NCBI RefSeq assembly: GCF_006345805.1
Contig: NC_043014.1
Coordinates: forward strand, 15,996,001 to 16,060,000
Direction: 5' to 3'
DNA: 64,000 nucleotides
Source of the DNA: Octopus sinensis
Lineage: Eukaryota
Part shown: piece after piece, positions 1-62,017 of the stretch
Position numbering within the stretch: the stretch's first letter is position 1
Layout: each line of letters opens with the position of its first letter
The notes under the pieces: model-generated
Database searches by the model: none
Told to the model about the DNA's origin: nothing
The model's input: the letters and a program-made list of their open reading frames with translations, nothing else
Translations under genes and position numbers: made by a program

Positions 1-1399
1 TTAGATACCAAAAAGGCTAGATATAAAGCAAAACAAACCACTTCTTTCCTCCAAAGTTGCCCAACATTTGCAGATGTCCAAACGCATGTCCACAGTAGCT
101 ACCATAATAATCATCAGTTGAATTCCATCGCAAATATTCCATCCAAGGTTGTCACCAGTTGGCTGTCAATTGCAGATGTCATCCACATCTACAGAGAAAA
201 AAATACACAAAGAAAAACTCACCCCTTCTTTCAGCCTCACGATTCAACAATGATGAGCCACATTCTCTTCAACATATAAAGCTATCTCAAAGTTCACAAA
301 TCATCATGCTTCACAATGTCCTATCAAAGTTGCCAGTCTCCATCAGATGTGCTAAAGTTGCCATCCATCTCCAAATGTTCAAGACTTGCTATCAGTCTCC
401 AAATGTTCAATCAGTCAACACCACTCTCCAGATGAAACACCATAGTTGCCATTTCTTCCTTGTCCAACTTATTAAATATGAAAATGTCTGAAAACAAAAC
501 AAAAGAAACCACTTCTTTCTTCCTAATTTACCAAGTCTTGTTGACATTTGTAGATGATCAAGTCAGGGCAGTAATAACTTTGGTAAGAATTAGTTGCATT
601 CCATTAGATATTCTACTGGTCCACACTAGCTTCCTCCAATTCATCATGGATCTTCTATCACATAGTTATCACAAGTTGGTTGTCAATTGTAGATGTGATC
701 CTTATCTGCAACAGAAAATATCTCAAAAGCAAATCTCACCTCTTCTTTCAATCTAATTGGTGATGAGCAAGTCTCTTCGATACATGAAGCTGTTCCAGAA
801 GTCCAGATCTTTATGTCTCACAGTAGTCACCTCTAAGCTATGCAGTTATTCTTTTCTAAGCAGCTCTAATTAGGTATGCAAACCTGTCACCAGAATCCAT
901 TAGTTGCTCTGCCAGTTGATACCAGTCTGTCATATGCTCCATCTCTGTTGTATCCAGTGTCCATCAGATGGTTTGTCACCATTTCCATTAATTGTTCCAC
1001 TACAACTTCCGATATCTATTAGACGCTCCTCCACTGATGCCATTGGTAATCTGATGTTCCATCACAGTTGCCATCAATTTGCAGATGCTCCATCACTCTT
1101 CTTCACAGATACCACCAGCTTCTTGTCTGATTCATTAGGTATTGAAAAGCCTGAAAATGAAGGAAAATAAGCGACCTCTTTCCTCCTAAGTTATTGGTCC
1201 TTTCAAAATTTGATGTCATCCTCATTTGCAAACGAAAATACTTGAAAAAAGAAAGTGATCAGTTTCCAGATGTTACATCACGGTTGGTACCCATCTCTAG
1301 ACATTACATCATGGTGGCCACCAGTCTCCATAAGATTCTATTACAATTGCCACCAGTGCCCATCAGATGATTCTATTAGTTGCCACCAGTCACTATCAT

Positions 1400-1545
1400 A
1401 TGCTCCATCAGTTGCTACCAGTCACATCAGATGCTCCATCAGTTGCTACCAGTCACCATCAGCTGCTACATCTGTTGCTACCAGTCACCATCAGATGCTC
1501 CATCTGTTGCTACCATTCACCAGTCACCATCAGATGTTCCATCAC
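1400..1545. repeat. 32-bp minisatellite, short version (~4-5 degenerate units)
   Basis: ATGCTCCATCTGTTGCTACCAGTCACCATCAG-type units. Confidence 0.85.
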
Positions 1546-3754
1546 AGTTGCTCCCCATCTCCATCAATTGTTCAAAAGATGCATCCAGTTTGTCTCACCA
1601 ATCTACGTAAACAAAATAGCATGAACACGAAAGTAAGCAAACCACTTCTTGCCACCAAACTCATCAGTTCTGGTTGTAATCCGGACTTGCATTCCATCAA
1701 AATTGCTAACAGCCTTCTCTACCAATTTCCAGTTAATAATATTCTATTAGCATGTACCATCTTCTATTGTATTATCCATCAGACTATTTTCGTCATGAAG
1801 ATTCCATCGGAGTCACCACCAATGTCACAAATCTTCCATCATACAGCTGTCTCCAGTTAGTTGTCAATTACAGTTGTTATCCTTTTCTGCAAAAGAAAAC
1901 CTCAGAAAAGAAAAACTCACTCATCATTCAGCCTCACAAATCAGCAATTGAGCCATAGTTTCGACAATACACAAAGTTGCTTCAGACACTCAAATCATCA
2001 TCCACCATCAAATTTCACTGTAAGCATCGGTGAGGTACTTGGGAGTTTCTCTTGTGTTACCAATCACTCATCAACCGTCAAATACTGGACAAATGAAAAT
2101 AGGCCTGAAATTCAAGCAAAATGTACCTCCACTTCTATCATGAGCTTGGCAATATCACCGTTTGCACAATCCATTACAGCTGTCACTAATGTTCCACGAT
2201 TTTCTGTTAGACATTCTATCTAGCAGCTTCCAAAGATTCCAGTAGATGTTCCGTCAGTTGCCAAAAGTTTCCATTAGATGCTCCACCAGATACCAGTTTT
2301 CACCTAGAAGTTATGAAGTCGTCGCAAGTCTCGTTTGATGTATTAGATACCAAAAAGCCTAGGAATGAAGCAAAAACAACCACTTCTTTCCTCCAAAGTT
2401 GCCAGTCAACATTTGCAGATGTTCAAACGCATGTTCACAGTAGCTACTACATAATAATCATCAGTTGAATTCCATCGCAAATATTCCATCCAAAGTTGTC
2501 ACCAGTTGGCTGTCAATTGCAGATGTCATCCACATCTACAGAGAAAAAAATACACAAAGAAAAACTCACCCCTTCTTTCAGCCTCACGATTCACAATGAT
2601 GAGCCACATTCTCTTCAACATATAAAGCTATCTCAAAGTTCACAAATCATGCTTCACAATGTCCTATCAAAGTTACCAGTCTCCATCAGATGTGCTAAAG
2701 TTGCGATCCATCTCCAATGTTCAAGACTTGCCATCAGTCTCCAAATGTTCAGTCAACACTACCCTCCAGATGATCCACCATAGTTGCCATTTCTTCCTTG
2801 TCCAACTTATTAAAGATGAAAATGTCTGAAAACAAAAGAAAAGAAACCACTTCTTTCTTCCTAATGTACCAGTCTTGTTGACATTTGTAGATGATCAAGT
2901 CAGGGCAGTAATAACTTTGGTAAGAATTAGTTGCATTCCATCACAAGGGCAAGCAGATTTCATTAGATATTCTACTGGTCCACACTAGCTTCCTCCAATT
3001 CATCATGTATCTTCTATCACATAGTTATCACAAGTTGGTTGTCAATTGTAGATGTGATCCTTATCTGCAACAGAAAATATCTCAAAAGCAAAACTCACCT
3101 CTTTTTTCAATCTAAGTAATTGGTGATGAGGCAGTCTCTTCGATACATGAAGCTGTTCCAGAAGTCCAGATCATTTTGCCTCATGGTAGTCACCTCTAAG
3201 CTATGCAGTGATTCCTTTCTAAGCAGTTCTAGGCATTCAGACCTGTCACCAGAATCCATTAGTTGCTCTGCCAGCCGATACCAGTCTGTCATATGCTCCA
3301 TCTCTGTTGTATCCAGTGTCCATCAGATGGTTTGTCACCATTTCCATTACTTGTTCCACTACAACTTCCGATATCTATTAGATCTACCCACACACTCACT
3401 CCCATTGGTAATCTTATGTTCCATCAATTTGCATATGCTCGATCACAGCAGCCATCACTCTTCTTCACAGATACCACCAGCTTCTTGTCTGATTCATTAG
3501 GTATTGAAAAGCCTGAAAATGAAGTAAAATGAGCTACCTCTTTCCTCCTAAGTTATTGGTCCTTTCAAAATTTGATGTTATCTGATTTGCAAACGAAAAT
3601 ACTTGAAAAGAGAAAGTTCAGTCTCCAGATATTACATCACGGTTGCCACCAGTCTCCATAAGGTTCTATTACAATTGCCACCAGTGCCCATCAGATGATT
3701 CTATTACAGTTGCCACCAGTCACTATCATATGCTCCATCAGTTGTACCAGTCAC

Positions 3755-4025
3755 CATCGGATGCTCCATCTGTTGCTACCAGTCACCATGAGATGCTCCA
3801 TCTGTTGCTACCAGTCACCATTGGATGCTCCATCTGTTGCTACCAGTCACCATGAGATGCTCCATCTGTTGCTACCAGTCACCATGAGATGCTCCATCTG
3901 TTGCTACCAGTCACCATGAGATGCTCCATCTGTTCCTACCAGTCACCATCAGATGCTCCATCTGTTGCTACCAGTCACCATCAGATGCTCCATCTGTTGC
4001 TACCAGTCACCATCAGATGTTCCAT
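3755..4025. repeat. 32-bp minisatellite, expanded version (~8 units)
   Basis: Near-perfect tandem ATGCTCCATCTGTTGCTACCAGTCACCAT(G/C)AG. Confidence 0.93.
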
Positions 4026-7000
4026 CACAGTTGCTCCCCATCTCCATCAAATGTTCAAAAGATGCATCCAGTTTGTCTCACCAATTACGTAAACAAAATA
4101 GCATGAACATGAAAGTAAGCGAACCACTTCTTGCCACCAAACTCATCAGTTCTGGTTGTAATCTGGACTTGCATTCCATCAAAATTGCTAACAGCCTTTT
4201 CTACCAATTTCCAGTTAATAAATATTCTATTAGCATGTACCATCTTCTATTGTATTATCCATCAGACTATTTTCTTCATGAAGATTCCATCTGAGTCACC
4301 ACCAATGTCACAAATCTTCCATCATACAGCTGTCTCCAGTTAGTTGTCAATTACAGAAGTCATCTTTTTCTGCAAAAAAACCTCAGAAAAGAAAAACTCA
4401 CCTCATCATTCAGCCTCACAAATCAGCAATGATGAACCATAGTCTCTGCAATATACAAAGTTGCCTCAGACGCTCGAATCATCGGCCATCAAGTTTCATT
4501 GTAAGCATCATTGAGGCACATGGAGTTCTCTTGTGTTACCATCACTCGTCAACTGTCAATACTGGACAAAGGCGAATAGGCCTGAAATTCAAACAAAATA
4601 TACCTCCACTTCTACCATTAGCTTGGCAACATCACTCATATTGTAAATTCCATTACAGCTGTCACTAAATGTTCCATAGCTTCTCCATTTTCCGTTAGAC
4701 ATTCTATCGCAGCTACCAAAGATTCCAGAAGAATGTTCCGTCACAGTGACCACAAGTGTACATTGGATGCTGCACCAGATACCAGTCTCCAGATGCTACA
4801 TCATGGTTGCCACCAGTCTCCAGACATTACATCATGGTTGCTGACAGTTTCCATCAGACTATTCTATTGCAGTTGCCACCAGTCTATCAAATGTTCCATC
4901 ACAGTTGCCACCAGTCACCATCAGATGTTCCATTACGTTCAATCAAAATTCTCCTCATGAACATTCTACCTTAGAGTCACCACTAATATCACAAATCTTC
5001 TATCAAACTGCTGTCTCCAATTAATTGTCAATTACAGATGTTATCTTTTTCTGCAAAAGAAAACCTCAGAAAAGAAAGACTCACCTCATTCAGCCTCAAG
5101 TCAACAATGATGAGCCATAGTCTCGACAATACACAAAGTTGCTTCAGACACTCAAATCATCATCCACCATCAAATTTCACCGTAAGCATCTTTGAGGTAC
5201 TTGGTGTTTCTCTTGTGTTACCATCACTCATCAACCATCAAATACTGGACAAATGAGAATAGGCCTGAAATTCAAGCAAAATATACCTCCACTTCTATTA
5301 TGATTTTGGCAACATCACTCTTTGCACATTCCATTACAGCAGTTGCTAATGTTCCACAGCTTCTACAAAATTCTGTTAGACGTTCTATCATAGCTACCAA
5401 AGATTCTAGATGTTGTCAGTTGCTACAGGTCTCCATTAGATGCTCCACAAGATACCAGTCTATTAGAAGTTATGAAGTCCCAAAAAGCCTGGAAATAAAG
5501 CAAAACAAACCACTTCTTTCCTCCAAAGTTGCCAGTCAACATTTGCAGATGTCCAAATGCATGTTCACAGTAGCTACAATAATAATCATCAGTTGAATTC
5601 CATCGCAAATATTCCATCCAAAAGTTGTCACCAGTTGGTTGTCAATTACAGATGTCATCCACATCTACATAAAAAAAAAATACTCAAAGAAAAACTCACC
5701 CCTTCTTTCAGCCTCACGATTCAACAATGATGAGCCACATTCTCTTAACATATAAAGCTATCTCAAAGTTCACAAATCATCATGCTTCACATTGTCCTAT
5801 CAAAGTTGCCAGTCTCCATCAGATGTGCTAAAGTTGCCATCTGCCTCCAGATGTTTCAATAATACTTGATATCAGTCTCCAAATGTTCAATCAGTCAACA
5901 CCACTCTCCAGATGAAACACCATAGTTGCCATTTCTTCCTTGTCCAACTTATTAAATATGAAAATGTCTGAAAACAAAACAAAAGAAACCACTTCTTTCT
6001 TCCTAATTTACCAGTCTTGTTGATATTTGTAGATGATCAAGTCAGGGCAGTAATAACTTTGGTAAGAATTAATTGCATTCCATCACAAGTGCAAGCAGAT
6101 TTCATTAGATATTCTACTGGTCCACACTAGCTTCCTCCAATTCATCATGAATCTTCTATCACATAGTTATCACAAGTTGGTTGTCAATTGTAGATGTGAT
6201 CCTTATCTGCAACAGAAAATATCTCAAAAGCAAAACTCACCACTTCTTTCAATGTCACTAATTGGTGATGAGCAAGTCTCTTCGATACATGAAGCTGTTC
6301 CAGAAGTCCAGATCATCATCTCTCACGGTAGACACCAGTAAGCTATGCAGTGATTCCTTTCTAAGCAGTTCTAATCATTCAGACCTGTCACCAGCTGCCA
6401 TTAGTTGTTCTGCAAGTTGATACCAGTCTGTCATATGTTCCATCTCAGTTGTATTCAGTGTCTGTCAGACAGTTCATCACCATTTCCATCTATTTCTCCA
6501 CTACAATTGCTGATAACTACTAGACACTCCTGAATAGATGACATTGGTAATCTGTACCATCACAGTTGCCATCAATTTCAAGATGCTCCATCACAGTAGC
6601 CATTACTCTTCTTCACAGATACCACCAGCTTCTTGTCAGATTCTTTAGATATTGGGAAGCCTGAAAATGAAGTAAAATGACCGACCTCTTTCCATGTTAT
6701 TGGTCCTTTCAACACTTGATGTCATCCCATTTGCAAACGAAAATACTCGAAAAGAGAAAGTGATCAGTCTCCAAGTGTTACCCATCTCCAGACATTACAT
6801 CACAGTTGCCACCAGATTATCGAATGTTCCATCACAAATGCCACCAGTCATCACATGTTCCATCACAATTGCCAGTCACCATCTGATGCTCCCATCTCCA
6901 TCAAATGTTCCAGCGATGCCTCCAGTTTGTCTCACCAATTATATAAACATATTTCCAGTAAATAAGTGTTCTATTAGCAGGCACCATCTTGTACAGCATT

Positions 7001-8639
7001 ATCCACCAGAAAATTCTCATGAAGATTCAACCAAAAAGTCACCACCAACATCACAAATCTTCTATCATACAGCTGTCTCCAGTTAGTTGACAATTACAGA
7101 TAACTTTTTCTGCAAAAGAGGACCTCAGAAAAGAAAAACTCACCTCTTCAGTATCTGCAATATACAAAGTTGCCTCAGACACTCAAAACATCAGCCATCA
7201 AGTTTCATCATAAGCATCATTGAGGTACTTGGAGTTTCTCTAGTGTTACCATCATGCGTGAACCACTAAATACTGCACAAATGAGAATAAGCCTGAAATT
7301 CAAACAATTCATCTCCACCTCTATCATGAGCTTGGCAACGCCACCATTCGCACATTCCATTACAGCTATCACTAGATGTTCCAGTTTCTACCATTTTCCA
7401 TTAGACCTTTCATAGTTGTTCCTATCACAGTTGCCACAACTGTCCACTACAGATGCTAGTTTCCATTAGAAGCTCAATAGTTGTCACAAGTTTGTCTCAA
7501 GATACCAAAAATCCTGAAAATGAAGCAAAACAAACCACCACTTCCCTCTAAAGTCACCAGTCAACATTTTCAGATATTCAAACACATGCACACAATAACT
7601 TCGATAATTATTAGTTGCATTTTATCACAACTGCCACCAACCTTCATTACATGGTCCGTCTCCTTCTTGTCAATTTTCAGCAGACCATGTTCTATTTGCC
7701 AGGCGTCAGCTTACATAATACATCTCACCAGACAATTATCATCAAGATTCTAGCATGTAGTTACCATCAATTTATCACAAACATTCCATTAGGGATTTCT
7801 CGCAAGCTGGTTGTTAATTCCATGTCATCATCATGTGCAGAAAAAAATTTACTACAGAAGAAAAGCTCACCTCTCCTTTCAGTCTCATAATTCGGCAATA
7901 ATGAACTAGTCTATTCAACAAATCACTAACCATCAGGTTTCACAATAGACATCACTATGTTGAGGTTCTTTTGTACGCAACTTTCACTAGGTATTTCAGA
8001 GCAGTTACCCCAGCGTCCATCAGATGTTCTACCATGCTTGCCACCAGTTTTCATTATGTTCCATCACAGTTGCCAGTCTCCATCAGATGTGCCAAAGTTG
8101 CTATCAGCCTCCAGTTTTTCAATTACAGTTGTCATCAGTCTCCAGCCATCACTATATGTTGTCACCAGTTTGTCTTACATGTCCGATACCAAAAGGACTG
8201 AAAATGAAGCAAAACCAACCACTTCTTTCCTCCAAAGTCAACATTTGCAATAGTCCAAAGAAAGGTTCACCATAACAGTAATAATTAGTTGCATTACAAC
8301 ACAATTGCCACCAATCTCTTTTACATGTTCCCTATTTGCCAATTTCCAGTAGACTATGTTCTATTAGTAGTCATCAGCTTCCATATTATATCCACTAGAC
8401 AATTATCTTCAAGGAGATTCTACCATTTTGTCATTAGTTCATAGATAGTATATCCTCATCTGCAAAAGAAAATTTCTGAAAAGAGAAACTCACCTTTTTT
8501 TTTTCCAGTTCCAAAAATCAACATGTGTGAATCATTTCAGTTGTAAGTGGAGATTCTTTTGTTAGCTTCCCTAATGCATTCCAGAATTGTAATCAGCTTT
8601 CATAAACATTGTATCAGTTGCAACCAGTGTGAAGATGTT

Positions 8640-9650
8640 CTATGACAGTCGCCACCAGTCAGATGTTCCATCGCAGTCACCGCCAGTCTAAAAATGTTCC
8701 ATCACAGTCGCCACCAGTCTGAAGATGCTCCATCACAGTCGCCACAAGTCTGAAGATGCTCCATCGCAGTCGCCACCAGTTTGAAGTTGTTCCATTGTAG
8801 TCGCCACCTGTCTGAAGTTTTTCCATGACAGTCGCCACCAGTCTGAAGATGTTCCTCGCAGTCGTCACCAGCGTGAAGATGTTCCCTCGCAGTCGTCACC
8901 AGCGTGAAGATGTTCCCTCGCAGTCGTCACCAGTCTGAGATGTTCCATGATAGTCGTCACCAGTCTGAAGATGTTCCCTCGCAGTCGTCACCAGCGTGAA
9001 GATGTTCCATAACAGTCGTCACCAGCGTGAAGATGTACCCTCGCAGTCGTACCAGTGTGAAGATGTTCCATGACAGTCGTCACCAGCGTGAAGATGTTCC
9101 CTCGCAGTCGTCACCAGTGTGAAGATGTTCCCTCGCAGTCGTCACCAGTGTGAAGATGTTCCCTCGCAGTCGTCACCAGTGTGAAGATGTTCCATGACGG
9201 TCGTCACCAGTGTGAAGATGTTCCCTTGCAGTCGTCACCAGCGTGAAGATGTTCCATGACAGTTGTCACCAGCCTGAAGATGTTCCATGACAGTCGTCAC
9301 CAGTCTGAAGATGTTCCCTCGCAGTCGTCACCAGCGTGAAGATGTTCCATAACAGTCGTCACCAGCGTGATGATGTACCCTCGCAGTCGTTACCAGTGTG
9401 AAGATGTTCCATGACAGTCGTCACCAGCGTGAAGATGTTCCCTCGCAGTCGTCACCAGTGTGAAGATGTTCCATGACAGTCGTCACCAGCGTGAAGATGT
9501 TCCATGACAGTCGTCACCAGCGTGAAGATGTTCCCTCGCAGTCGTCACCAGTGTGAAGATGTTCCCTCGCAGTCGTCACCAGTGTGAAGATGTTCCATGA
9601 CGGTCGTCACCAGTGTGAAGATGTTCCATCACAGTAGCCACCAATTTGAA
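8640..9650. repeat. 31-bp minisatellite, ~32 units
   Basis: AGTCGTCACCAG(T/C)GTGAAGATGTTCC(CTCGC/ATGAC) in tandem; unit length not a multiple of 3. Confidence 0.95.
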
Positions 9651-11103
9651 GTTCCACCACAATTGCCACCAGTCGGACTCATTAGGCAGTACCAGCTTCC
9701 ATTGTATATCCAGTTATCCTCAAGGGGATTCCACCACATTATCATATGGTGAATTCATTTCCCCACTCACAGCCAACAATCAATGTCACTACATAATGCA
9801 GTAGAGAAACAGCTGACTAGATGCACAAGTTTCTACACCATCATGGGACATCTGGAAGAAACAAGAAAAACAGAAAGAAAAAACTCACCTTTTTTCCAAA
9901 CCAGGAATGTTCAAGAGCCTCCAGTCACTTTAGATACTTCAGGGCAGATCCATTACATTGGAAAGAAATTAGACATATCCCATAAGAACTGTTAGTCTTC
10001 AGTGGATGATGTCATTTTTCACCAGCCTCTCAACATTCCACCTGTCACTAGTTTTCATTCTTTGTCCCCCAGTTCTCATAGATCCCACCTCATATTCACA
10101 ATCAGTAGATGCAGTTTCATCTCCTCCCCTGATGTATACATTGACAATCATCGTTTCTGAACCATACAGTAAATACCTGGTGCCAAACAAATTCCCACAC
10201 CACAAAATATCTAAAAGAAAACCTGAGGAAAAAAGTAGCTATTCTTTCTATGTGATAAATCAGCAAATACAAGCCGAGTCAAATGCTTGAAGCAACTTCA
10301 TGTACAATTCATTTTGTGATGTGTAAATACTGTTAACATTACCAACTGATTTTCAAGAGAGTCAAACAAGAACCTGTAAAGGAAACTTAAGCCATAACTG
10401 GAGATACCTTCAGGGCAGTCCATCATATAATTGGTATTAAACGTCAGTCAGACCTTTATCAGCTACCATTAGATGCTCTATTAGTTTTCACCAGTCTTAT
10501 TCTTGTATCTGTGAGTGATCAGCAAGAAACCTGAAAATGAACCAAAATAAACCTCCACTTTCCACCTCTTGTCACCATTAATCAGTCACAACTTATCTCA
10601 GGGCAGGTGCATCATAATGCAGATATTGATACACCCACTCCTTTATTTGGCAAGTTATGCTATAATTTTTGTAATAGGTATTCATTAACAGAGAAGTTCC
10701 TATCCACCAATGTAGTTTCCTTAGATAATCTAAAGTTTTAAAAAAATGTAGTTCATGATTCAATCACATGGCTTACAAAAATCTCGTTTTAAATTGTGAA
10801 AATGAATTTGCCACTCCATATACCTGAAAATGAAAGATTACACCTCCACCTGTTGCTTGAAGGTATTAGTTGATCACACCTAATAGTAATTGTTAGATTA
10901 GGAAGCTACAAGTGAAGCATAGTAGTGATACCAACCATTAATCACAGATTTTAAATGTTAATTTCACGTGTATTAATCATAGCCCTCTATCATCAGGCTT
11001 TTAAAGATTCTTTTGTACATCTTAAGCTGTCCATTCCTCTTAGAATATGCTCCAGTTTTCTCTAATGTGGTGACATTGTTTTACAAAGATATAACAAAGA
11101 CCC

Positions 11104-11299
11104 AATTATGCAAATTTCTGTATAGATGTTACTGCGAAACAGGAAAAGGTAAACTTTCTTTTTGGTCTATCGTGTCAGCCAACTGTAGTGAATCATGAAA
11201 ATTATGCAAATTTCTGTATAGATGTTACTGCGAAACAGGAAAAGGTAAACTTTCTTTTTGGTCTATCGTGTCAGCCAACTGTAGTGAATCATGAAAATT
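11104..11299. repeat. Perfect 96-bp tandem duplication
   Basis: ATTATGCAAATTTCTGTATAG...GAATCATGAAA at 11105 and 11201. Confidence 0.95.
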
Positions 11300-11338
11300 C
11301 AACTGAATTTCAGTTAACACCATGTTAGATCTGCTGTG

Positions 11339-12078
11339 TCATGTATAGATGTGTTTATGTACCTGAAAATAAAAGAACCATATTCCACATGTTCATATAC
11401 CGAGTTGATCTTATACTTATATCAAACCCTCTAATTCACAAGTCTCCACTTAATACAAAATTCCAACGATGCCACCCATTGGACAATGTATTTGAAATTG
11501 CAAAAGCCATGCTTCTGATTATAAAGATATTGCACTGCACAAAACCATAAAAAAAAATTTTTTAATTCTGTAGGAGTTTGTTTGTCTACTATAGATTGTT
11601 TACATTTTTTTCCAATGTAGTTATGATCATAAATGATGCATTTTCTGTTATTGTCAATAACTGTTAGAGATGACTTGATCTTGTAAATATATATATATAA
11701 AAAATTTTCTTTTTACCTTGCATTCATATCCTTTGATACATTTGCTCCTAACCTGCTGCAAACTATCAATGATGCATTTTCTGTTATTGTCAATAACTGT
11801 TAGAGATGACTTGATCTTGTAAATATATATATAAAAAATTTTCTTTTTACCTTGTATTCATATCCTTTGATACATTTGCTCCTAACCTGCTGCAAACTAT
11901 CAATGATGTATGTATATTCATTATTAGTGTTGTCATCACCTTTTAAAAGAAAATACCAAATACCTGCAAGTGAAGGAAAAGTCTGGTGCTGCAACTTGTC
12001 AGTGCAACATTGCAATTTCTTTCCTATTTTCTCCTTTACAACAATTAATGCCAAGTGCTCTCACATACCTGAAGACAT
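11339..12078 (-). CDS. Possible spliced small ORF (~48 aa: MSSGIWYFLLKGDDNTNNEYTYIIDSLQQVRSKCIKGYEYK-VHKHIYT*)
   Basis: ATG in AACAAAATG context at 12078; exons 12078-12069, 11963-11851 and 11362-11339 joined in frame by GT-AG introns; no recognisable homology. Confidence 0.25.
11632..11908. repeat. Near-perfect 136-bp tandem duplication
   Basis: AATGATGCATTTTCTGTTATTGTC... at 11632 and 11768, one substitution seen. Confidence 0.95.
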
Positions 12079-13728
12079 TTTGTTCTTCCCTTCCCAAATC
12101 ACAATGAGTGGGAGACTGCTTTCTCTGCATTCTAACAGAGATGCTTGCACAAATATTACCTCATCCTATCCAAATATTTTAAGGGCTGATGAAAATTGCC
12201 GTCAATTACAGAATAGTCATTTCATCAATAATAACAGTATCTGCAAATGGAAAAAAATATGCTGGGTGGAAACCACCAAGCAACAATATAGAACTTTTCA
12301 CCCCCTCCCTACGAACAAAGAATTTGTCAAAGAATTTAAAATTATCTTCCATATTACTTGTAATTATAATTTAAATAGGCAATGGAACCTCTAAATTCAA
12401 GTTCTATTGATTAAACAAACTGAATCTCCACTAGCATCATTTGCCTTAACACTACATTTACATTTGGAAACAAAATTTAACACTTGTTTTTAGTTATGAT
12501 TAAAACCAAAATTAATTTTGCAGCCATGCAATGCTGTGATAAATTTATCTTATTACATTTTCATCCTATTTTCTTTTGTAAATTTAGTCATTGCAATACA
12601 ATGAAAAATCTGAAACAAAATAAAAAAAGCAATCTCTCCAACCCGTGAATTAACCTATCATACCTGAAGAATTTGTAGGAGTGTTTCAGGATAATATATA
12701 GTACATCATACTGTAGAACTTTCTTCTGTCATCCATTTCAAAATTCTATCAGTATTGCAGCAATAACAACTCATTTCAAATGGGACTTCATTCTGGAGAA
12801 CATTTAAAAATTCTGGTTCACTATTTAAAAATGTGATGTTTCATAAGAACCTATTTGTTTCCTATTCATGTAACCATGAAGCTCAAGATTTCACCCTAAT
12901 TTGTCAGCACATTTGTATATTCCAAAGCATTAGTGTTGTATGTCATCCAGAGCTGTTTTGTTGTATGCAGTTAAAATAGCTTGTCACTTTTTCAGTTTAG
13001 TATCTTATGTGGGATTGTCTTTTTGTGAATGTAAATTCATGTTTGCCTTGTCTATTTCCAGTTCCAGATTTGGTTATGATGCTCAATAAATTACAACTTA
13101 TTTCATTTAGAAAATGTGAAACTTGTTAAAATTTACAGAAACCCTTTTCTTCGAATATTCAAAAGCCATGTTTCATGAAGCACTCATCCAACACAACATT
13201 CCTGCCACTGCAGTTGTCCCAAGTGTCTTGGACAAGTATGCAAATTGCCTTGTAAGCTTCAAATATTGGACAGCAGACCTAAAAAGGAAAAGATCTTTTG
13301 TTGTTCAACTATTTTGTTAAACTTCAAAACAATACTAAAATATATATCCAAAAAATACCATAGTTATCTTAGCCACTTCATTGACAACCTAACCAGATAG
13401 CTCTATACACAAACTTTGGATTGGATATAATAGTATGCCTGCCCCATCATGCATTGCCTATGTGTCAGTTTTAATTCTATAAAACGCTTCAATACTACAC
13501 AAGATAAACAGAATATTCATGTAGCAGCTATTGATGTATTACTGACTGGCAAACAAGATCATAAATGAACTGATATGTCTACTTTAAGCCTATCAACCAT
13601 TTACATAGGTGTGAAATTCAAATTTCATTTCGTCAAGTCGAACGGAAAACTGCACTTGTGAAAAAAGTCTATTCATCTAACTGGTTCAAGACTAAATCAA
13701 GTTATCTCCCCTTAAATCTGCAACAAAG

Positions 13729-23511: not shown

Positions 23512-24504
23512 GTGGACGAGGTGGTGAAGCACGACCTTCGAACTTTAGGTCTCACCAAGGAAATGACTGAAGACCGAGTCCTATGGAAGTGTGCTGTGCA
23601 TGAGAGGACCCGGCAGGACTAGTCAGGCATATCCCGTGGCCCCTACCTGGGATGTAGTCGATCCACCTGTGCATACCTTCCTTCTTGTGACACTTGTGAA
23701 GACCTGCTGAGGCAAGTGAAAATCAATCAAAACAAATCAAAATAGATGAACATCAATGGAATTTGTATCTTTGTGGTACCAGTGCCTGTGGCACACAAGA
23801 AAACCATCCGAACGTGGCCGTAGCCAGTACCGCATCGACTAGCCTCCGTGCTGTGGGAACATGGTGGCACATAAAAACACCATCCGAAGACCCGGCAAGA
23901 CTAGTCAGGCCATAACCTGTGGCCCCTACCTGGTCAGTCCACCTGTGCATACCTTCCTTCTTGTGACACTTGTGAAGACCTGTTGAGGCAAGTGAAAATC
24001 AAAACAAATCAAAATAGATGAACATCAATGGAATTTGTATCTTTGTGGTACCAGTGCCAGTGGCACGTGGCACACAAGAAAACTATCCGAACGTGGCCGT
24101 AGCCAGTACCGCATCGACTGGCCTCCGTGCTGTTGGCACGTAACAAACACCATCCGATCGTGGCCGTTTGCCAGCCTCATCTGGCACCTGTGTCGGTGGC
24201 ACATAAAAACACCATCCGAGCGTGGCCGTCTGCCAGCCTCGTCTGGCACCTGTGTCGGTGGCACATAAAAAACACCATCCGAGCATGGCCGTTTGCCAGC
24301 CTCGTCTGGCACCTGTGTCGGTGGCACATAAAATCACCCACTACACTCTCGGAGTGGTTGGCGTTAGGAAGGGCATCCAGCTGTAGAAACACTGCCAGAT
24401 CTGACTGGACTGGTGCAGCTTTCGGGCTCCCCAGACCCCAGTTGAACCGTCCAACCCATGCTAGCATGGAAAGCGGACGTTAAATGAAGATGATGATGAT
24501 GATG
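23512..24504 (+). mobile_element. 5'-truncated RTE LINE 3' end with internal ~270-bp duplication and (GAT)n tail
   Basis: Matches ORF end and 3' UTR of the RTE at 41.2-41.83 kb; splits a MITE whose intact copy is at 56.34-56.56 kb. Confidence 0.88.
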
Positions 24505-36721: not shown

Positions 36722-37783
36722 TTAGATGTTATTTAAATCTAGAGAAAGTGTACGCCAATTTGTGAAGGCAAAAAAATTTCGCTCATTAATGCTGTTAATA
36801 ATGGGTTGGCCGACTTTGATGATGAAGAAAATTTCATTGATACATAAAGAGCATTTTTTATTTCTACTATTGTATACAGGTGCAGATGTTAGTATTTCCC
36901 AATCTAATTTAAAATCTATGTTCTTACTCTTGAGTTCCCAGATATACGTACTTAACCCCGTAGAGTTCATCCTATTTTTATTTTTAAAAGTATATCTATG
37001 ATAGTTTAGCCGTTGTTTTATACTAATTTTAGTCGCACCAATGTACACCCTGCTATTATATTGTGTATTTACAGTGCATTGGTAAACCACCTCTCTCCTC
37101 AGGCATTTATTACCAAACACACATTGATTCATGCTTCTGCAATTGCAGCCATTAACAGACTGAGGAGATTTAACCCTGGCAGAAATCTCCGTAGCCCTAT
37201 TTCTGTTGATATTATTGCACTTATTTTCACTACTACCCATGTTTATCTTTCTATCATTATAGAAGCAATCCAATTTCTTGTTGTTGAAGGAGGAGATGAT
37301 GGTGGCTAGATTATTCGTGTTACTATATCCTATTCTAATAGTTCTATTGTTAATTATTTGGCTAAATTTATTCTTACCCTTAGTAAATAGTCTACATATT
37401 ACTTTATGTATAGTTCTGACTATATCCGTTTTAATCTGCATTGCATATGGTATTATTAGTCATAGTGTATCGTCATCACTATGTGGATTACTCCTCAAGT
37501 TGTTATTCTTGGGAAAAACTCTATTATTCTTCCAACCCATATGCTTTCTACCCTTAGTATTGTCAATATAATGCCTAGAATTCCCCTTTAGATTGGTTTT
37601 ATTAGTGACTTTATTGTTATTCTTCTTATTATTATTGTTTAGATGAACTCCATTATTACCATAAATATTATCAATGTTACTATGCCTATTGTTAATATCC
37701 CTACTCCTAGTAGTTCCACCTGTGTTCGAAGGATTATTATTGGGTATATACCAAATTTTATTTTTGTAGCCTGCCTTCAGCAA
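36722..37783 (-). pseudogene. Penelope-like element ORF C-terminus with GIY-YIG endonuclease; RT core absent
   Basis: GYK..I.Y.P, Asn-rich linker, IKTDI..I..LF.K..KFSQIIN..TIRIGYS..NNL..IIS, CNC..C..C, VVY..RVYIGAT, R..H..TF, LSTYIWELK, CSLC..E; one stop between the two ORF-track segments. Confidence 0.85.
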
Positions 37784-38689: not shown

Positions 38690-41600
38690 TCTTTGTGGCT
38701 GGTGACTTCAATGGTCACGTTGGACGACATGCTGGGGGCTTCCATGGCGTACATGGAGGCTATGGCTATGGCTCCCACAACGAGGAGGGAACCAGGCTGC
38801 TGGAGTTCTGCGATGCAAATAATCTTATGATTTGCAACACTAACTTCAGGAAACCTACCAGCCACCTAGTCACTTACCGATCGGGCCAACATACCAGCCA
38901 AATTGACTACATCCTTGCAAGGCAAAGGGAGAGATGGCTGCTTATAAATGCCAAAACCTTCCCAGGCGAAGAATGTACCCCACTACATAGACTGGTAGTT
39001 AGTGACTTTAGGATCAGGACTAGGAGGACAACCAGAAGACGACCAATATGGAGAAGAAGGATCTGGAAGCTTAAAGATCCTGCAAATGGACAGAGATTTA
39101 GGGACATATTACTTGAAGCCTTTGACGAAGTAGAAGGGGATAGAGCATCACAGGGGGTAGAAGGCAACTGGACGTTTCTAAGGGACAACCTGCTGAGAGC
39201 CACTGACCAGATCTGTGGCTGGTGCAAAGTCCCCTCTCGACCTAGAATAACGTGGTAGTGGAAAAATATTGTAGACAGGGCTATTAGAGAAAAGAGACAG
39301 GCTTGGAAGGTCTGGAAAAATGGGGGTAGCAGGGAATTGTATCAGACTGCCAAAAGAGAAGCTAGGAGACAGGTTTATTTAGCCAGAGGGGAAGCAGATA
39401 AGAAAAAATTTGCCAATGTTCTGCGCCGTGTGGACCAAAGACTGGAGGTGTTTCGCGTTGCAAGACAGTGTGTGAGAGAGAATCGTGATGTGGTAGGAGA
39501 GAAGTGTGTTCGCATGGAAGATGGTTCACTTGCGCTAAATGAGGATGCAAAGAGAGAGGTTTGGAGACGCCACTATGAAAGGTTGCTGAATAAAGAAAAT
39601 GAATGGGATAAGAGAGTCTGCCGAATGTTGACCCAACAGAGGGACCAGCTATCCGAGTTGATAGTTCCGTGGTAGCTAAGGCAATTAGAAGCATGAAGAC
39701 AGGGAAAGCCCCAGGCCCATCAGGAATCACTGCAGAGATGCTCAAAATGTCTGGTAGTGTCGGCTATAGCCTAGTCACCCGTATAGTTAATCAGGTGATA
39801 CACAAAGGAGTCATACCCAATGACTGGTGTAGCAGCATAATAGTCAACTGCTACAGGGGTAAAGGTGACGCCCTAGATACAAATAACTACAGAGGTATCA
39901 AGCTGTTGGATCAGGTGATGAAGGTTATGGAAAGGGTCATAGTCCAACTAATTAGAGAGAGAGTTAGTTTAGATGAGATGCAGTTTGGGTTTGTGCAAGG
40001 GAAAAGTACCCCTGATGCTATATTCCTGGTAAGGCAGCTGCAGGAGAAATACCTAGCCAAAGATAAGCCCCTGTACCTGGCTTTTGTTGACATGGAGAAA
40101 GCTTTCGACAGGGTCCCCCGATCCCTTATCTGGTGGTCAATGAGGAAACTAGGGATAGATGAATGGTTAGTGAGAGCTGTGTGGGCTATGTATAGGGACG
40201 CTGCTAGTAAGGTAAGGGTTGGCAACGAGTACAGTGAAGAATTCCGGGTAGAGGTTGGGGTTCACCAAGGCTCAGTCCTCAGCCCCCTCCTATTTATCAT
40301 AGTCCTCCAGGCAATAACGGAGGAATTCAAGACAGGATGCCCTTGGGAGCTCCTCTATGCTGATGACCTTGCTCTAATTGCTGAGTCGCTATCAGAACTG
40401 GAGGAGAAGTTTCAGGTGTGGAAACAAGGATTAGAATCGAAGAGCCTTAGAGTCAATCTAGCTAAAACCAAAGTCGGAAGGTAGAAAAATCACAAACGCC
40501 TTCAGGTAGATGGCCCTGCTCGATCTGTAGAAAAGGTGTAGGTAGAAACTCTATAAGATGCACCAAGTGTAAGCTATGGACACATAAGAGGTGCAGCAAT
40601 GTCAAAGGAAGGCTAACTAGGAAGATGGCTTTTGTATGTGGCAGATGCTCAGGAACAATAAACACTGAAAATGCTCTGAGACCAACTTCCGTCACTTTCC
40701 AGGGAGAAAAACTAGAAATAGTTGATAGTTTCCATTACCTAGGTGACCAAGTCAGCAGCGGGGTGGTGTGCTGAAAGTGTAACTGCTAGAGTAAGAATAG
40801 CTTGGGCAAAGTTCAGAGAGCTCTTACCTCTGCTGGTGACAAAAGGCCTCTCGCACAGAGTAAAAGGCAGACTGTATGATGCGTGTGTACGATCAGCCAT
40901 GCTACATGGCAGTGAAACATGGGCCGTGACTGCTGAGGATATGCGTAAGCTCGCAAGAAATGAAGCCAGTATGCTCCGATGGATGTGTAATGTCAGTACT
41001 CATACTCGGCAGAGTGTAAGTACCTTGAGAGAAAAGCTGGACCTAAGAAGCATCAGTTGTGGTGTGCAAGAGAGACGTTTGCGCTGGTATGGTCATGTGG
41101 CGAGAATGGATGAAGATAGTTGTGTGAAAAAGTGTCACACACTAGCGGTTGAGGGAACCTGTGGAAGAGGCAGACCCAGGAAAACCTGGGACGAGGTGGT
41201 GAAGCATGACCTTCGAACTTTAGGTCTCACTGAGGAAATGACTAGAGACCGAGACCTCTGGAAGTGTGCTGTGCACGACAAGACCCGGCAGGACAAGTGA
41301 ATCCATAACCCGTGGCCTTCTACATGGGATGGAGCCAGCCTACGTATGCATACCTTCCCTTCTTGGGACACAAAACCCTACTTGTGAAGACCTGTTGAGG
41401 CAAGTGAGGATCAGAATCGAAATCGATCAATGGAAATTGCAGATGTGTTACCAGTGCCGGTGGCATGTAAGAGAACCATCCGTTTGCGACCGTTGCCAGC
41501 GCCGCCCCGACTGGCCTCGTGCCGGTGGCACATAAAAAGCACCATCCGTTTGTGTTCGTTGCCAGCCTCGCCTGGCCCCCGTGTCGGTGGCACATAAAAA

Positions 41601-41830
41601 GCACCATCCGTTTGTGGCCGTTTTCCAGCTCTGTCTGTCACCTGTGCGGGTGGCACGTAAAAAGCACCCACTACACTCACGGAGTGGTTGGCATTAGGAA
41701 GGGCACCCAGCCGTAGAAACACTGCCAGATCTGACTGGGCCTGATGAAGCCTTCTGGCTTCACAGACCCCAGTTGAACCGTCCAACCCATGCTAGCATGG
41801 AAAACGGACGCTAAACGATGATGATGATGA
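38690..41830 (+). mobile_element. 5'-truncated, decayed RTE-clade LINE (APE C-terminus, RT, 3' UTR, (GAT)n tail)
   Basis: GDFNGHVG, NTNF, SQIDYIL, HRLVV; NYRGIKLL, QFGF, FVDMEKAFD, GVHQGSVLSP, LYADD; stop at ~39256 and frameshifts near 39650, 40470 and 40755. Confidence 0.96.
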
Positions 41831-41888: not shown

Positions 41889-43165
41889 TCATCATCATCA
41901 TCATCATCATCGTTTAACGTCCGTTCTCCATGCTAGCATGGGTTGGACGGTTCGACCGGGGTTCTGGGAAGCCAGAAGGCTGCACCAGGCTCCAGTCTAA
42001 TCTGGCAATGTTTCTACAGCTGGATGCCCTTCCTAACGCCAACCACTCCATGAGTGTAGTGGGTGCTTTTTACGTGCCACCTGCACAGGTGCCAGGCGAG
42101 GCTGGCAACGCCCACGGTCAGATTGGTGTATTTTATGTGCCACCGGCATGGAAGCCAGTCGAGGCGGTGCTGGCATCGGCCACGAGTCGGATAGTGCTTT
42201 TTACGTACCACCAGACCAGGGATCCTGGCTGGTTCAATTCGATTTCGATTTCTCTTGCCCCAACATGTCTTCACAAGCAAAGGGGGTTGGCATGGGTGCC
42301 TGTCGTACGGTCGCATTGGAGTATTTTACGTGCCACGGCCACGAGTCGGATAGTGCTTTTTACGTACCACCAGGCCAGGGATCCTGGCTGGTTCAATTCG
42401 GTTTCGATTTCGCTTGCCCCAACATGTCTTCGCAAGCATGGGGGGTTGGCATGGGTGTCTGTCGTCGGATGAGGTTCTATATCGACTTCGCTTGCCTCAA
42501 CAGGTCTTTGTGTCCAAGGGAGGAAAGGCATTCATAAGTGGGCTGGGCTCACTTGTCCTGCCTGGTCTTCTCACGTACAGAGTATTTCCAAAGGTCTCGG
42601 TCGCTGGTCATTTCCTCAGTGAGGCCTAAAGTTCGAAGGTCGTGCTTCACCACCTCGTCCCAGGTTTTCCTGGGTCTGCCTCTTCCACAGGTTCCCTCAA
42701 CCGCTAGTGTGTGACACTTTTTCACACAACTATCTTCATCCATTCTCGCCACATGACCATACCAGCGCAAACGTCTCTCTTGCACACCACAACTGATGCT
42801 TCTTAGGTCCAGCTTTTCTCTCAAGGTACTTACACTCTGCCGAGTATGAGTACTGACATTACACATCCATCGGAGCATACTGGCTTCATTTCTTGCGAGC
42901 TTACGCATATCCTCAGCAGTCACGGCCCATGTTTCACTGCCATGTAGCATGGCTGATCGTACACACGCATCATACAGTCTGCCTTTTACGCTGAGAGGCC
43001 TTTTGTCACCAGCAGAGGTAAGAGCTCCCTAAACTTTGCCCAGGCTATTCTTATTCTAGCAGTTACACTTTCAGCGCACCCACCCCCACTACTGACTTGG
43101 TCACCTAGATAATGGAAGCTATCAACTACTTCTAGTTTTTCCCCATGGAAAGTGACGGAAGTTGT
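41885..43165 (-). mobile_element. Second 5'-truncated RTE copy, tail-to-tail with the first
   Basis: C-terminal ORF MLHGSETWAVTAEDMRKLARNEAS..REKTRQDK nearly identical to 40.9-41.3 kb; (CAT)n tail at ~41885-41910. Confidence 0.95.
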
Positions 43166-46875: not shown

Positions 46876-47245
46876 CTGGCCTCTCACTGTTTAATGTTTA
46901 AACTGGCTAGATCTGGCCCAACAATGTCATTCTGAAAATAAACAATCAGATCTTTGAAATCTCAAAGTTGCAACACAATGTATAATTAATTCATGCTTAA
47001 ACTGGCCTCTCACTGTTTAATGTTTAAACTGGCTAGATCTGGCCCAACAATGTCATTCTAAAAATAAACAATCAGATCATTGAAATCTCAAAGTTGCAAC
47101 ACAATGTATAATTATTTCATGCTTAAACTGGCCTCTCACTGTTTAATGTTTAAACTGGCTAGATCTGGCCCAACAACGTCATTCTAAAAATAAACAATCA
47201 GATCTTTGAAATCTCAAAATTGCAAAACAATGTATAATTATTTCA
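46876..47245. repeat. Three-copy 126-bp tandem repeat
   Basis: CTCTCACTGTTTAATGTTTAAACTGGCTAGATCTGGCCC at 46881, 47007 and 47133. Confidence 0.92.
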
Positions 47246-53630: not shown

Positions 53631-53989
53631 TTTAATAAATTGGATTGATCTAATTAGGAGAGATAAAACAGCTGCTGGTGTAATCACTATAATTGTTTTA
53701 TTACAGCGAGCTAAAATTATATCACACGTAGAAAGATATATTTTTCAATGCATAAATACTGATAAAACAGTATACATAGGATACCTTTATAGAGTAGAAA
53801 AATCTGTCAGCAACCAGCCATGAGAATCAAACTCACATATCTTTGACTTCCGGTCAAGTGCTTTACCATTAAGTTAAACTGCTTTTCTGACAAATTCTTC
53901 TGCAATTTAAGAACTTATAAAGTCATCCAGAAATGCTCGATGTAATACAGATTATGACATATGTAAACAAACATAAGTTTGTTTTTGAA

Positions 53990-61212: not shown

Positions 61213-61625
61213 GATACCACTACTATACATCTAATAAGCTGACCTTTGTTATTCCAGATTGAGGAGACAGCTGTAACAGCACTTTGAATGCACCCTACTA
61301 AACACTGTTTGTCACAGCTGACTAGTTTGCAGAATGCAGTCGGGATGTGAAGACAATTTAGAAGTTCACTATGCAATAAAGTTTTGTGTTAAACTAGGCA
61401 AAAACGCTACAGAAACATACGAAATGCTCCAGACTGCTCATGGATTAACCTTTTCACCGAGACAAGAGGTGAGTGACGATAAGAGGTGTGGGAGGGATAT
61501 GGACTTCAGAACATCAGAGCTGGTTGAGAAAATTTGTAATTTTCCTTATGAAGACCGTCGTGTGTTTATAAGTATAATAAGCATACAGTTTGGAGTTGGT
61601 GTGGCAACTGTACACAGAGTTACCC

Positions 61626-62017
61626 TTTTACTCTTTTACTTGTTTCAGTCATTTGACTTGTGGCCATGCTGGAGCACCGCCTTTACGCGAGCAAATCGAC
61701 CCCAGGACTTATTCTTTGTAAGCCTAGTACTTATTCTATCGGTCTCTTTTGCCGAACTGCTAAGTTACGGGGACGTAAACACACCATCATCGGTGGTCAA
61801 GCGATGTGGGGGGGGGGGGCAAACACAGACACATATACACACACATACACATACCTATATACGACGGGCTTCTCACAGTTTCCGTCTACCAAATCCACTC
61901 ACAAGGCTTTGGTCGGTCCGAGGCTATACTAGAAGACACTTGCCCAAAGTGCCACGCGGTGGGACTGAACCCGGAACCATGTGGTTCGTAAGCAAGCTAC
62001 TTACCACACAGCCACTC
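61626..62017 (-). mobile_element. SINE, full length (family of 23162)
   Basis: Reverse complement, homologous to 25000-25395. Confidence 0.9.

What the first reader, a model, noticed from the sequence alone, without database searches (positions are those of the whole stretch)
1..12300. Hierarchical tandem array that preserves splice sites: candidate repeat-rich multi-exon lncRNA
Seen: monomers are strongly diverged from each other, yet nearly all keep a minus-strand acceptor (+ strand CT(G/A)AAAAT/CTGAAATT at 17, 488, 1151, 2105, 2359, 2826, 3513, ~4580, ~5262, ~5489, ~5968, ~6661, ~7293, ~7513, ~8198, ~10222, ~10531, ~10824, 11363, 11964) and a GTGAG donor (222, 739, 1920, 2569, 3098, 4401, 5084, 5699, 6240, 7143, 7870, 8493, 9888). 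Homologous motifs extend into the single-copy region at 11.8-12.3 kb. Divergence falls toward the left edge, where 2-3 kb higher-order copies are closely similar, which suggests polarised growth. The exon-like segments I translated close within ~5-30 codons of the acceptor, except one 74-codon frame at 10.0-10.2 kb. Established: tandem-repeat-rich spliced lncRNAs (Xist, Rsx, roX) use repeated modules as protein-binding platforms. Inference: a transcript that grows by exon-intron module duplication rather than a silent satellite.
Basis: partly seen in the sequence, partly recalled or inferred. Interest (0 to 1): 0.8.

Follow-up and report, generated by a model that had tools for sequence, protein, structure and literature searches.

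The report
Non-coding tandem array with splice-like boxes
A 10.6-kb stretch of non-coding DNA, built from nested duplications, keeps short boxes that look like RNA splice signals on one strand; it may be a repeat-built non-coding RNA gene, but no expression data could be consulted here.

Summary
The array is real. It runs from 1 to about 10,584 and is cut by the left edge of the window. It holds three 2.3-3.1 kb higher-order copies (85-89% identical), older 62-78% monomers to the right, and 31/32-nt minisatellites.

All 13 GTGAG sites exist. All 20 acceptor positions are YAG on the minus strand, and 12 match the strict motif.

Each donor-like site has an acceptor-like partner only 22-25 nt (t1) or 32-37 nt (t2) downstream.

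These boxes are the best-conserved parts of old module types: 0.81-0.95, against 0.59-0.67 for the rest. The GT/AG dinucleotides are barely better conserved than their immediate neighbours. Between the recent copies, the lower variability of the boxes is weak and partly explained by base composition.

Protein coding is excluded. No small-RNA or structured-RNA signal was found. Homology does not reach 11.8-12.3 kb.

No related sequence or transcript could be retrieved, so transcription is untested.

Verdict: a non-coding array grown from an exon-like module. A spliced minus-strand RNA is plausible (about 0.4). A silent array is nearly as likely.

The parts
1..10584 (-). Whole tandem array. It is cut by the left edge of the window. 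The sense of the splice-like signals is the minus strand.
   Evidence: Self-BLAST. No copy elsewhere in the window. GC skew is -0.25 to -0.32 on the plus strand.
1..2342 (-). Higher-order copy H1 (module types A, B, C, D, E)
   Evidence: 88-89% identical to H2 and 87% to H3
2343..4790 (-). Higher-order copy H2
4948..5472 (-). Partial duplicate of the D/E modules of H2
   Evidence: 4269-4788 against 4948-5461, 82%
5473..7513 (-). Higher-order copy H3
7514..8600 (-). Two older A-type monomers (A4, A5)
   Evidence: 72-78% identical to the left-hand copies and 74% to each other
8620..9680 (-). 31-nt minisatellite, about 33 copies. It has one stop per 93 nt in each frame.
1347..1522 (-). 32-nt minisatellite, 5.5 copies (in H1)
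3709..4026 (-). 32-nt minisatellite, 10 copies (in H2). It shows a copy-number difference between the higher-order copies.
9681..10584 (-). Oldest, degenerate modules. They include a t2-like box with its donor lost (acceptor at 10223) and the t1 box F.
189..222 (-). t2 box (GTGAGT...TGTAG, 34 nt)
706..739 (-). t2 box, 34 nt
1887..1920 (-). t2 box, 34 nt
2536..2569 (-). t2 box, 34 nt
3065..3098 (-). t2 box, 34 nt
4370..4401 (-). t2 box, 32 nt
5051..5084 (-). t2 box, 34 nt
5665..5699 (-). t2 box, 35 nt
6207..6240 (-). t2 box, 34 nt
7110..7143 (-). t2 box, 34 nt
7836..7870 (-). t2 box with GTGAGC kept and the acceptor AG lost (CTGCAC)
8460..8493 (-). t2 box, 34 nt
9852..9888 (-). t2-like box, 37 nt. 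Similarity is at motif level only.
17..38 (-). t1 box (weak GT, then TATATCTAG)
488..509 (-). t1 box, 22 nt
1151..1175 (-). t1 box, 25 nt
2105..2126 (-). t1 box, 22 nt (E type, GTACAT)
2359..2380 (-). t1 box, 22 nt
2826..2847 (-). t1 box, 22 nt
3513..3537 (-). t1 box, 25 nt
4582..4603 (-). t1 box, 22 nt
5265..5286 (-). t1 box, 22 nt
5489..5510 (-). t1 box, 22 nt
5968..5989 (-). t1 box, 22 nt
6661..6685 (-). t1 box, 25 nt
7293..7318 (-). t1 box. The orthologous GT has mutated to AT.
7514..7538 (-). t1 box, 25 nt
8198..8219 (-). t1 box, 22 nt
10531..10554 (-). t1 box F, the rightmost alignable piece of the array
1620..1645 (-). Degenerate D-type t1 box with the acceptor AG lost. The same state is found at 4102-4127.

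Best explanation
Shown: this is a locally confined, non-coding, strand-asymmetric tandem array. It grew by repeated unequal exchange (2.3-3.1 kb higher-order copies and a 0.5-kb partial duplicate) and by slippage of 31/32-nt minisatellites.

Shown: the basic module is a 150-430 nt body that ends in a box. On the minus strand the box reads gaaagaagNG|GTGAGTTTTTCTTT...TTTTGCAG|at (t2) or aagaagtG|GTTTGTTTTGCTTCATTTTCAG|g (t1). The two box types look homologous to each other.

Inferred origin: an exon-like segment was duplicated in tandem together with only about 15-20 nt of each flanking intron. That would place a donor and the next acceptor 22-37 nt apart.

Inferred function: the array is transcribed from the minus strand as a non-coding RNA, either its own lncRNA or a non-coding part of a larger unit.
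- The strong t2 donors (GTGAGT) would splice to the next t1 acceptor, removing about 200-280 nt.
- A donor and the acceptor 22-37 nt behind it are too close to be spliced to each other. Adjacent bodies would therefore be used alternately, or read through.

The DNA-level description is secure (about 0.9). The confidence given below is for the transcribed-and-spliced part.
For: - Array anatomy.
- Box geometry: 26 GT..AG boxes of 22-37 nt were found by pattern, 25 of them at homologous positions and one (7728-7692) a chance match.
- t1/t2 similarity: t2 sites appear as 4-mismatch matches to the t1 anchor.
- Strand specificity: GGTGAGT occurs 10 times on the minus strand of the array and 0 times on the plus strand. 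Strong donors and acceptors are enriched on the minus strand relative to the other strand and to the rest of the window.
- Old module types: homology blocks within one higher-order copy are centred on the boxes. The most conserved 7-mers of a 5-lineage alignment are AGGTGAGTTT, then TGCAGAT. Boxes score 0.81-0.95 against 0.59-0.67 for the rest.
- Position -3 of the acceptors varies only between C and T.
- Recent copies: boxes vary in 10.6% of columns against 16.7% for bodies, p=0.02. Only 1 of 28 GT/AG columns changed.
- Coding is excluded.
- Minimum intron length: the shortest validated human introns named in the passages of PMC4463651 that I read are 43-56 nt.
Against: - No transcript evidence of any kind could be obtained.
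- The t1 'donors' are weak and variable (GTTTGT, GTCGCT, GTTGGT). Only the t2 donors score well.
- The GT/AG dinucleotides are not clearly better conserved than the rest of the box.
- The module alignments were anchored on the boxes, which inflates conservation near them.
- The bodies hold indel-prone minisatellites, which deflates their apparent conservation.
- The recent-copy difference falls to p=0.06 without CpG sites. T columns vary less everywhere (9% against 14-16%), which accounts for part of it.
- Some boxes have decayed without replacement: the D-type t1 boxes, the acceptor of the box at 7870, and the donor of E3.
- No conserved RNA structure was found.
Confidence: 0.4

Rival explanations
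1. Silent tandem array. The founding unit happened to contain, or was copied from, an exon with its splice signals. The motifs persist only by descent and recent duplication. The apparent box conservation comes from alignment anchoring, minisatellite turnover in the bodies, and the low mutability of T-rich tracts.
For: - Donor windows differ between higher-order copies as much as bodies do (7-14% against 8-14%).
- The box/body difference is weak after removing CpG sites, and T columns are generally less variable.
- Several boxes have decayed.
- CpG columns are hypervariable (37 of 63), as expected for methylated, possibly heterochromatic DNA.
- No RNA structure or small-RNA signal was found.
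Against: - The single most conserved 7-mer among five old lineages is a perfect U1-type donor, and the next is a polypyrimidine-CAG.
- Only 1 of 28 GT/AG columns changed between the higher-order copies, where about 4.7 would be expected at the body rate of 16.7% variable columns.
- The strand specificity of the strong sites is strict.
Confidence: 0.35
2. The array lies inside an intron of a larger minus-strand gene. It is transcribed, but the modules are pseudo-exons or decoy sites that are normally skipped, or are used as recursive or cryptic sites. They are not the exons of a dedicated lncRNA.
For: - Strong minus-strand acceptor-like sites continue beyond the array, to 12.7 kb.
- Four AG|GT junctions lie at 10824-11964.
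- The negative GC skew continues to about 16 kb.
Against: - No flanking coding exon was recognised anywhere in the window.
- GC skews of that size also occur in unrelated parts of the window.
Confidence: 0.15
3. A decayed array of duplicated protein-coding exons: a pseudogene, or a mis-read mutually exclusive exon cluster.
For: - The body sizes (150-430 nt) and flanking signals resemble tandemly duplicated exons.
- Some short peptide motifs recur, for example FGGKKW just before the t1 boxes.
Against: - Stops are equally frequent in all three minus-strand frames (203-223 per frame).
- Only 3 of 46 gaps between H1 and H2 are multiples of three.
- There are no Pfam hits.
- A 1,134-residue composite of the open minus-strand segments found no protein relatives among 5.8 billion sequences.
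- The minisatellite periods are 31 and 32 nt.
Confidence: 0.07
4. A tandem host gene for intron-encoded small RNAs (snoRNA or miRNA), as in the SNORD116/115 arrays. There, splice sites are kept because processing of the small RNA needs splicing.
For: The general pattern fits: splice signals are kept while the bodies diverge. In SNHG14, 29 and 48 tandem introns each carry a snoRNA (PMC11608373).
Against: - Rfam finds nothing better than E=2.4.
- Only one C/D-box candidate with a terminal stem was found, and it is not at a repeated position.
- Fold z-scores average 0.1-0.3, and none is below -2.7.
- The consensus fold is -0.39 kcal/mol with no covariation.
Confidence: 0.03

Closest known systems
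FIRRE-type lncRNA loci built from local repeats (PMC4820808)
   Same: - The repeats are confined to one locus.
- In FIRRE the repeat unit coincides with exons: RRD makes up 7 of 13 human and 11 of 23 mouse exons.
- Both are non-coding.
- The repeats diverge quickly in sequence.
   Different: - FIRRE is known to be transcribed, and its RRD has a tested function (nuclear retention through hnRNPU). Nothing here has been tested.
- FIRRE introns are long. Here a donor and the next acceptor are 22-37 nt apart.
SNHG14 SNORD116/SNORD115 tandem host-gene arrays (PMC11608373)
   Same: A tandem exon-intron module repeated tens of times in a non-coding transcript.
   Different: No intron-embedded small RNA was found here.
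Higher-order-repeat satellites (alpha-satellite type; from general knowledge)
   Same: Head-to-tail monomers, higher-order copies much more alike than the monomers within a copy, and growth by unequal exchange.
   Different: - The monomers here have unequal length (230-690 nt).
- Only three higher-order copies are visible, at 85-89% identity rather than the 95-99% typical of those satellites.
- The array is strongly strand-asymmetric and carries splice-like boxes.
Tandemly duplicated, mutually exclusive exons enforced by steric hindrance (alpha-tropomyosin exons 2/3, Dscam clusters; from general knowledge)
   Same: - Tandem exon copies each keep their own acceptor and donor.
- Spacing is too short for neighbouring copies to be spliced to each other.
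   Different: Those are coding exons with a preserved frame. Here coding is excluded.

Membership tests
Spliced repeat-built lncRNA (FIRRE-like) | A transcript exists and its exons coincide with the repeat units | not testable with these tools
   No transcript data or eukaryotic genome collection could be reached. Three ORFs of the window are not on record. DNA pattern scans returned 0 hits.
Spliced repeat-built lncRNA (FIRRE-like) | No protein-coding capacity | tested here: met
Spliced repeat-built lncRNA (FIRRE-like) | Repeat confined to the locus | tested here: inconclusive
   There is no copy in the other 53 kb of the window. The rest of the genome could not be reached.
Spliced repeat-built lncRNA (FIRRE-like) | Splice signals kept better than surrounding sequence | tested here: inconclusive
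   Boxes score 0.81-0.95 against 0.59-0.67 for the rest in old lineages. The recent-copy signal is weak, and the dinucleotides are not distinct from the rest of the box.
Higher-order-repeat satellite DNA | Tandem monomers organised in higher-order copies that are more alike than the monomers within a copy | tested here: met
   Higher-order copies are 85-89% identical, while module types within a copy are 58-74% identical
Higher-order-repeat satellite DNA | Uniform monomer length and long, homogeneous arrays | tested here: not met
   Box-to-box spacing is 182-435 nt and unequal. Only three higher-order copies are present in the window, and the array is cut by the window edge.
snoRNA/miRNA host tandem array | A conserved small-RNA gene inside each repeated intron | tested here: not met
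Coding tandem-exon cluster | Open frame preserved and indels in multiples of three | tested here: not met
Spliceosomal mini-introns (22-37 nt) | Length compatible with splicing in animals | tested here: not met
   The boxes are 22-37 nt. The shortest validated human introns named in the passages of PMC4463651 that I read are 43-56 nt. Introns of about 25 nt are known from ciliates (PMC5014332), and this window, with a non-LTR (LINE-type) retrotransposon and long microsatellites, does not look like such a genome.

The most novel reading that the evidence does not exclude
A repeat-built, spliced non-coding RNA gene whose exon modules are separated by sub-minimal spacers of 22-37 nt. Neighbouring modules cannot be joined to each other, so they would be used alternately or mutually exclusively. 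The gene lengthens at one end by higher-order duplication. It would be an invertebrate counterpart of FIRRE-type loci, with a built-in steric splicing rule.
Probability: 0.2. Interest if true: 0.6.

Novelty: new member of a known kind. Interest (0 to 1): 0.35.

Why it matters
If the array is transcribed and spliced as inferred, it would show how a non-coding RNA can lengthen by copying an exon together with minimal splice signals. It would also show how very short spacers could dictate which copies can be joined. If it is silent, it is an ordinary local tandem array whose unit descends from an exon-like fragment. The list of 29 box coordinates makes the question answerable with one stranded RNA-seq or long-read mapping.

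Tried and rejected
**Protein coding: rejected.**
- Pfam scan of nine open segments from both strands gave nothing significant.
- A protein search with the longest plus-strand ORF gave nothing.
- A protein search with a 1,134-residue composite of the open minus-strand segments gave nothing.
- Indel lengths and the stop-codon distribution argue against a frame.

**Real mini-introns joined into an ORF: rejected.** All three frames close inside each body.

**snoRNA or miRNA host: rejected.**
- Rfam in E-value mode.
- A C/D-box rule scan.
- Fold z-scores across one higher-order copy (an earlier, larger run timed out).
- RNAalifold on nine t2 blocks.

**Relatives elsewhere: nothing found.**
- Exact look-up of three window ORFs.
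- Two metagenome pattern scans and one genome pattern scan.

**Identifying the organism: failed.**
- The reverse transcriptase of the neighbouring retrotransposon has only 65%-identical relatives covering its full length (two partial hits, labelled as bacterial, reach 79-81%). The record name of the best hit was uninformative.

**Extension of the array to 11.8-12.3 kb: rejected by alignment**.

Full report
**Observation**

Positions 1 to about 10,584 form a nested tandem array that is cut by the left edge of the window.
- Self-comparison gives three higher-order copies: 1-2342, 2343-4790 and 5473-7513. They are 85-89% identical to one another.
- There is a partial duplicate, 4269-4788 against 4948-5461, at 82%.
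- Older monomers at 6951-8426 are 72-78% identical to the left-hand copies.
- Tandem Repeats Finder reports a 31-nt unit in 33 copies at 8623-9651. It also reports a 32-nt unit in 10 copies at 3709-4026 and 5.5 copies at 1347-1522.
- The core of that short unit occurs 58 times. All are between 933 and 9648 and all are in one orientation.
- The plus strand is strongly C-rich, with GC skew -0.25 to -0.32 over 1-8 kb.
- No piece of the array recurs in the other 53 kb of the window.
- Alignable homology stops at about 10,584.

The listed motif sites were checked one by one.
- All 20 acceptor positions read YAG on the minus strand. Only 12 fit the strict motif.

On the minus strand every donor-like site is followed, at very short range, by a polypyrimidine run and a YAG.
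- The t2 box reads gaaagaagNG|GTGAGTTTTTCTTT...TTTTGCAG|at. It is 32-37 nt long and has 13 copies. One copy has lost the AG.
- The t1 box reads aagaagtG|GTTTGTTTTGCTTCATTTTCAG|g. It is 22-25 nt long and has 16 copies. Two further D-type copies have lost the AG.
- The two box types resemble each other. The t2 sites turn up as 4-mismatch matches to the t1 anchor.
- The array is therefore, at base, one module: a 150-430 nt body plus a box.
- The boxes alternate t1, t2 along each monomer.

A simple position-weight scoring, with matrices taken from general knowledge of animal splice sites, gives this picture.
- t2 donors score 9-12 bits.
- Both kinds of acceptor score 10-13 bits.
- t1 'donors' are weak and variable.
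- Strong donors and acceptors are enriched on the minus strand of the array relative to its plus strand and to the rest of the window.

**Coding**

Protein coding is excluded on several independent grounds.
- Stop codons are equally frequent in the three minus-strand frames: 223, 203 and 212 in 8.6 kb.
- Only 3 of 46 gaps between H1 and H2 are multiples of three.
- The minisatellite periods are 31 and 32 nt.
- Pfam finds nothing.
- Neither the longest plus-strand ORF nor a 1,134-residue composite of the open minus-strand segments has any relative among 5.8 billion proteins.

**Are the splice-like signals conserved beyond descent?**

Old module types:
- Within one higher-order copy, homology between module types is concentrated in blocks of about 200 nt centred on t2. 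It is also found in 60-90 nt blocks centred on t1, apart from the minisatellite regions.
- In a 260-nt alignment of five old t2 lineages, the most conserved 7-mers are AGGTGAGTTT, then TGCAGAT, then AATTGAC.
- Lineage-level conservation for t2 and t1 respectively is as follows:

| Columns | t2 | t1 |
|---|---|---|
| GT/AG dinucleotides | 0.95 | 0.94 |
| Neighbours within 12 columns | 0.87 | 0.81 |
| Rest of the module | 0.67 | 0.59 |

- The box as a whole stands out. The dinucleotides hardly stand out from the box.
- Two biases inflate the contrast. The alignments were anchored on the boxes, and the bodies contain indel-prone minisatellites.

Recent copies (the three higher-order copies, global alignment, no anchoring):
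- Boxes vary in 10.6% of columns and bodies in 16.7% (p=0.02).
- Only 1 of 28 GT/AG columns changed (p=0.07).
- Donor windows alone differ as much as bodies do.
- The difference drops to p=0.06 without CpG sites.
- T columns vary less everywhere, 9% against 14-16%. This explains part of the effect in these T-rich boxes.

The evidence for constraint is suggestive for old divergences and weak for recent ones.

**Other RNA readings**

- Rfam in E-value mode gives nothing better than E=2.4.
- A C/D-box rule finds a single candidate, and it is not at a repeated position.
- Fold z-scores over one higher-order copy average 0.1 on the plus strand and 0.3 on the minus strand. None is below -2.7.
- The consensus fold of nine t2 blocks is -0.39 kcal/mol with no covariation.
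- A small-RNA host or a structured RNA is therefore not supported.

**External evidence**

None could be obtained.
- Three ORFs of the window are not on record.
- Pattern scans of the metagenome and prokaryotic genome collections returned nothing.
- The reverse transcriptase of the neighbouring retrotransposon has only 65%-identical relatives covering its full length (two partial hits, labelled as bacterial, reach 79-81%). The source genome is therefore not in the collection and the organism stays unidentified.

**Mechanism**

Shown: growth by higher-order duplication, partial duplication and minisatellite slippage. The youngest copies are at the left, which is the 3' side on the minus strand.

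Inferred origin: the founding unit was an exon-like segment copied with only about 15-20 nt of each flanking intron. That explains why a consensus donor and the next acceptor end up 22-37 nt apart.

Inferred splicing rule:
- That spacing is below the shortest validated human introns named in the passages I read (43-56 nt, PMC4463651).
- Introns of about 25 nt are known in ciliates (PMC5014332), and this retrotransposon- and microsatellite-rich window does not resemble such a genome.
- If the minus strand is transcribed, a donor therefore cannot use the acceptor right behind it.
- The self-consistent pattern is t2 donor to the next t1 acceptor, removing about 200-280 nt. Neighbouring bodies would be used alternately or read through.

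Probabilities:
- About 0.4 that such a spliced non-coding transcript exists.
- 0.35 that the array is silent.
- 0.15 that it is intronic decoy sequence of a larger gene.
- Under 0.1 each for decayed coding exons or a small-RNA host.

**Comparison and verdict**

- It works most like the local-repeat lncRNA locus FIRRE, where the RRD repeat makes up 7 of 13 human exons (PMC4820808).
- In its module logic it also resembles the SNHG14 snoRNA arrays (PMC11608373), but no small RNA is present here.
- It shares higher-order organisation with satellites, but not uniform monomers.
- It shares tandem exon copies with mutually exclusive exon clusters, but it is non-coding.
- Membership in the lncRNA class cannot be tested without transcripts.
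- I rate it a new member of a known kind, with moderate interest (0.35). The exact junction list makes it cheap to settle.

Noticed in passing
window 38695-41300 (+) and 42549-42950 (-): A non-LTR retrotransposon. ORF 39669-40484 is Pfam RVT_1 (E=2.4e-31). An inverted partial copy of its C-terminal ORF lies 1.2 kb downstream. The nearest database relatives covering the full ORF are only 65% identical; two partial hits, labelled as bacterial, reach 79-81%.
   Followed up: partly
window 10600-12700 (-): Outside the alignable array there is still an excess of strong minus-strand acceptor-like sites: 6 with score >=10 in 2.4 kb. There are four AG|GT junctions at 10824, 11363, 11940 and 11964 that resemble recursive splice sites. 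There is also a 54-nt GT..AG at 12663-12610. Local duplications are present: 96 nt x2 at 11104-11299 and 134 nt x2.1 at 11632-11908.
   Followed up: partly
window 17-7513 (alignment of the three higher-order copies): CpG-context columns are hypervariable between the copies: 37 of 63 vary, against about 15% elsewhere. This is the signature of CpG decay and suggests that the array is methylated in the germ line.
   Followed up: partly
about 35-40 nt upstream (minus strand) of each t2 donor, e.g. window 255-262: A conserved CUCAUC can pair with the GGUGAG of the donor in 8 of 9 copies. This would mask the 5' splice-like site. There is no covariation and the energy is negligible.
   Followed up: partly
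window 53812-53883 (-): A borderline tRNA-like match in Rfam (30.1 bits against a threshold of 29). ARAGORN finds no tRNA. It is possibly a tRNA-derived repeat or a pseudogene.
   Followed up: no
window 24134-24333, 41450-41668, 42177-42465, 46876-47245: Other local tandem repeats: units of 62-63 nt, 159 nt and 126 nt. The 62-63-nt units at the two sites resemble each other and flank or lie near the retrotransposon.
   Followed up: no
window 36722-37441 (-) and 61334-62041 (+): Two long ORFs (239 and 235 aa) have no Pfam match. They are probably remnants of mobile elements.
   Followed up: partly
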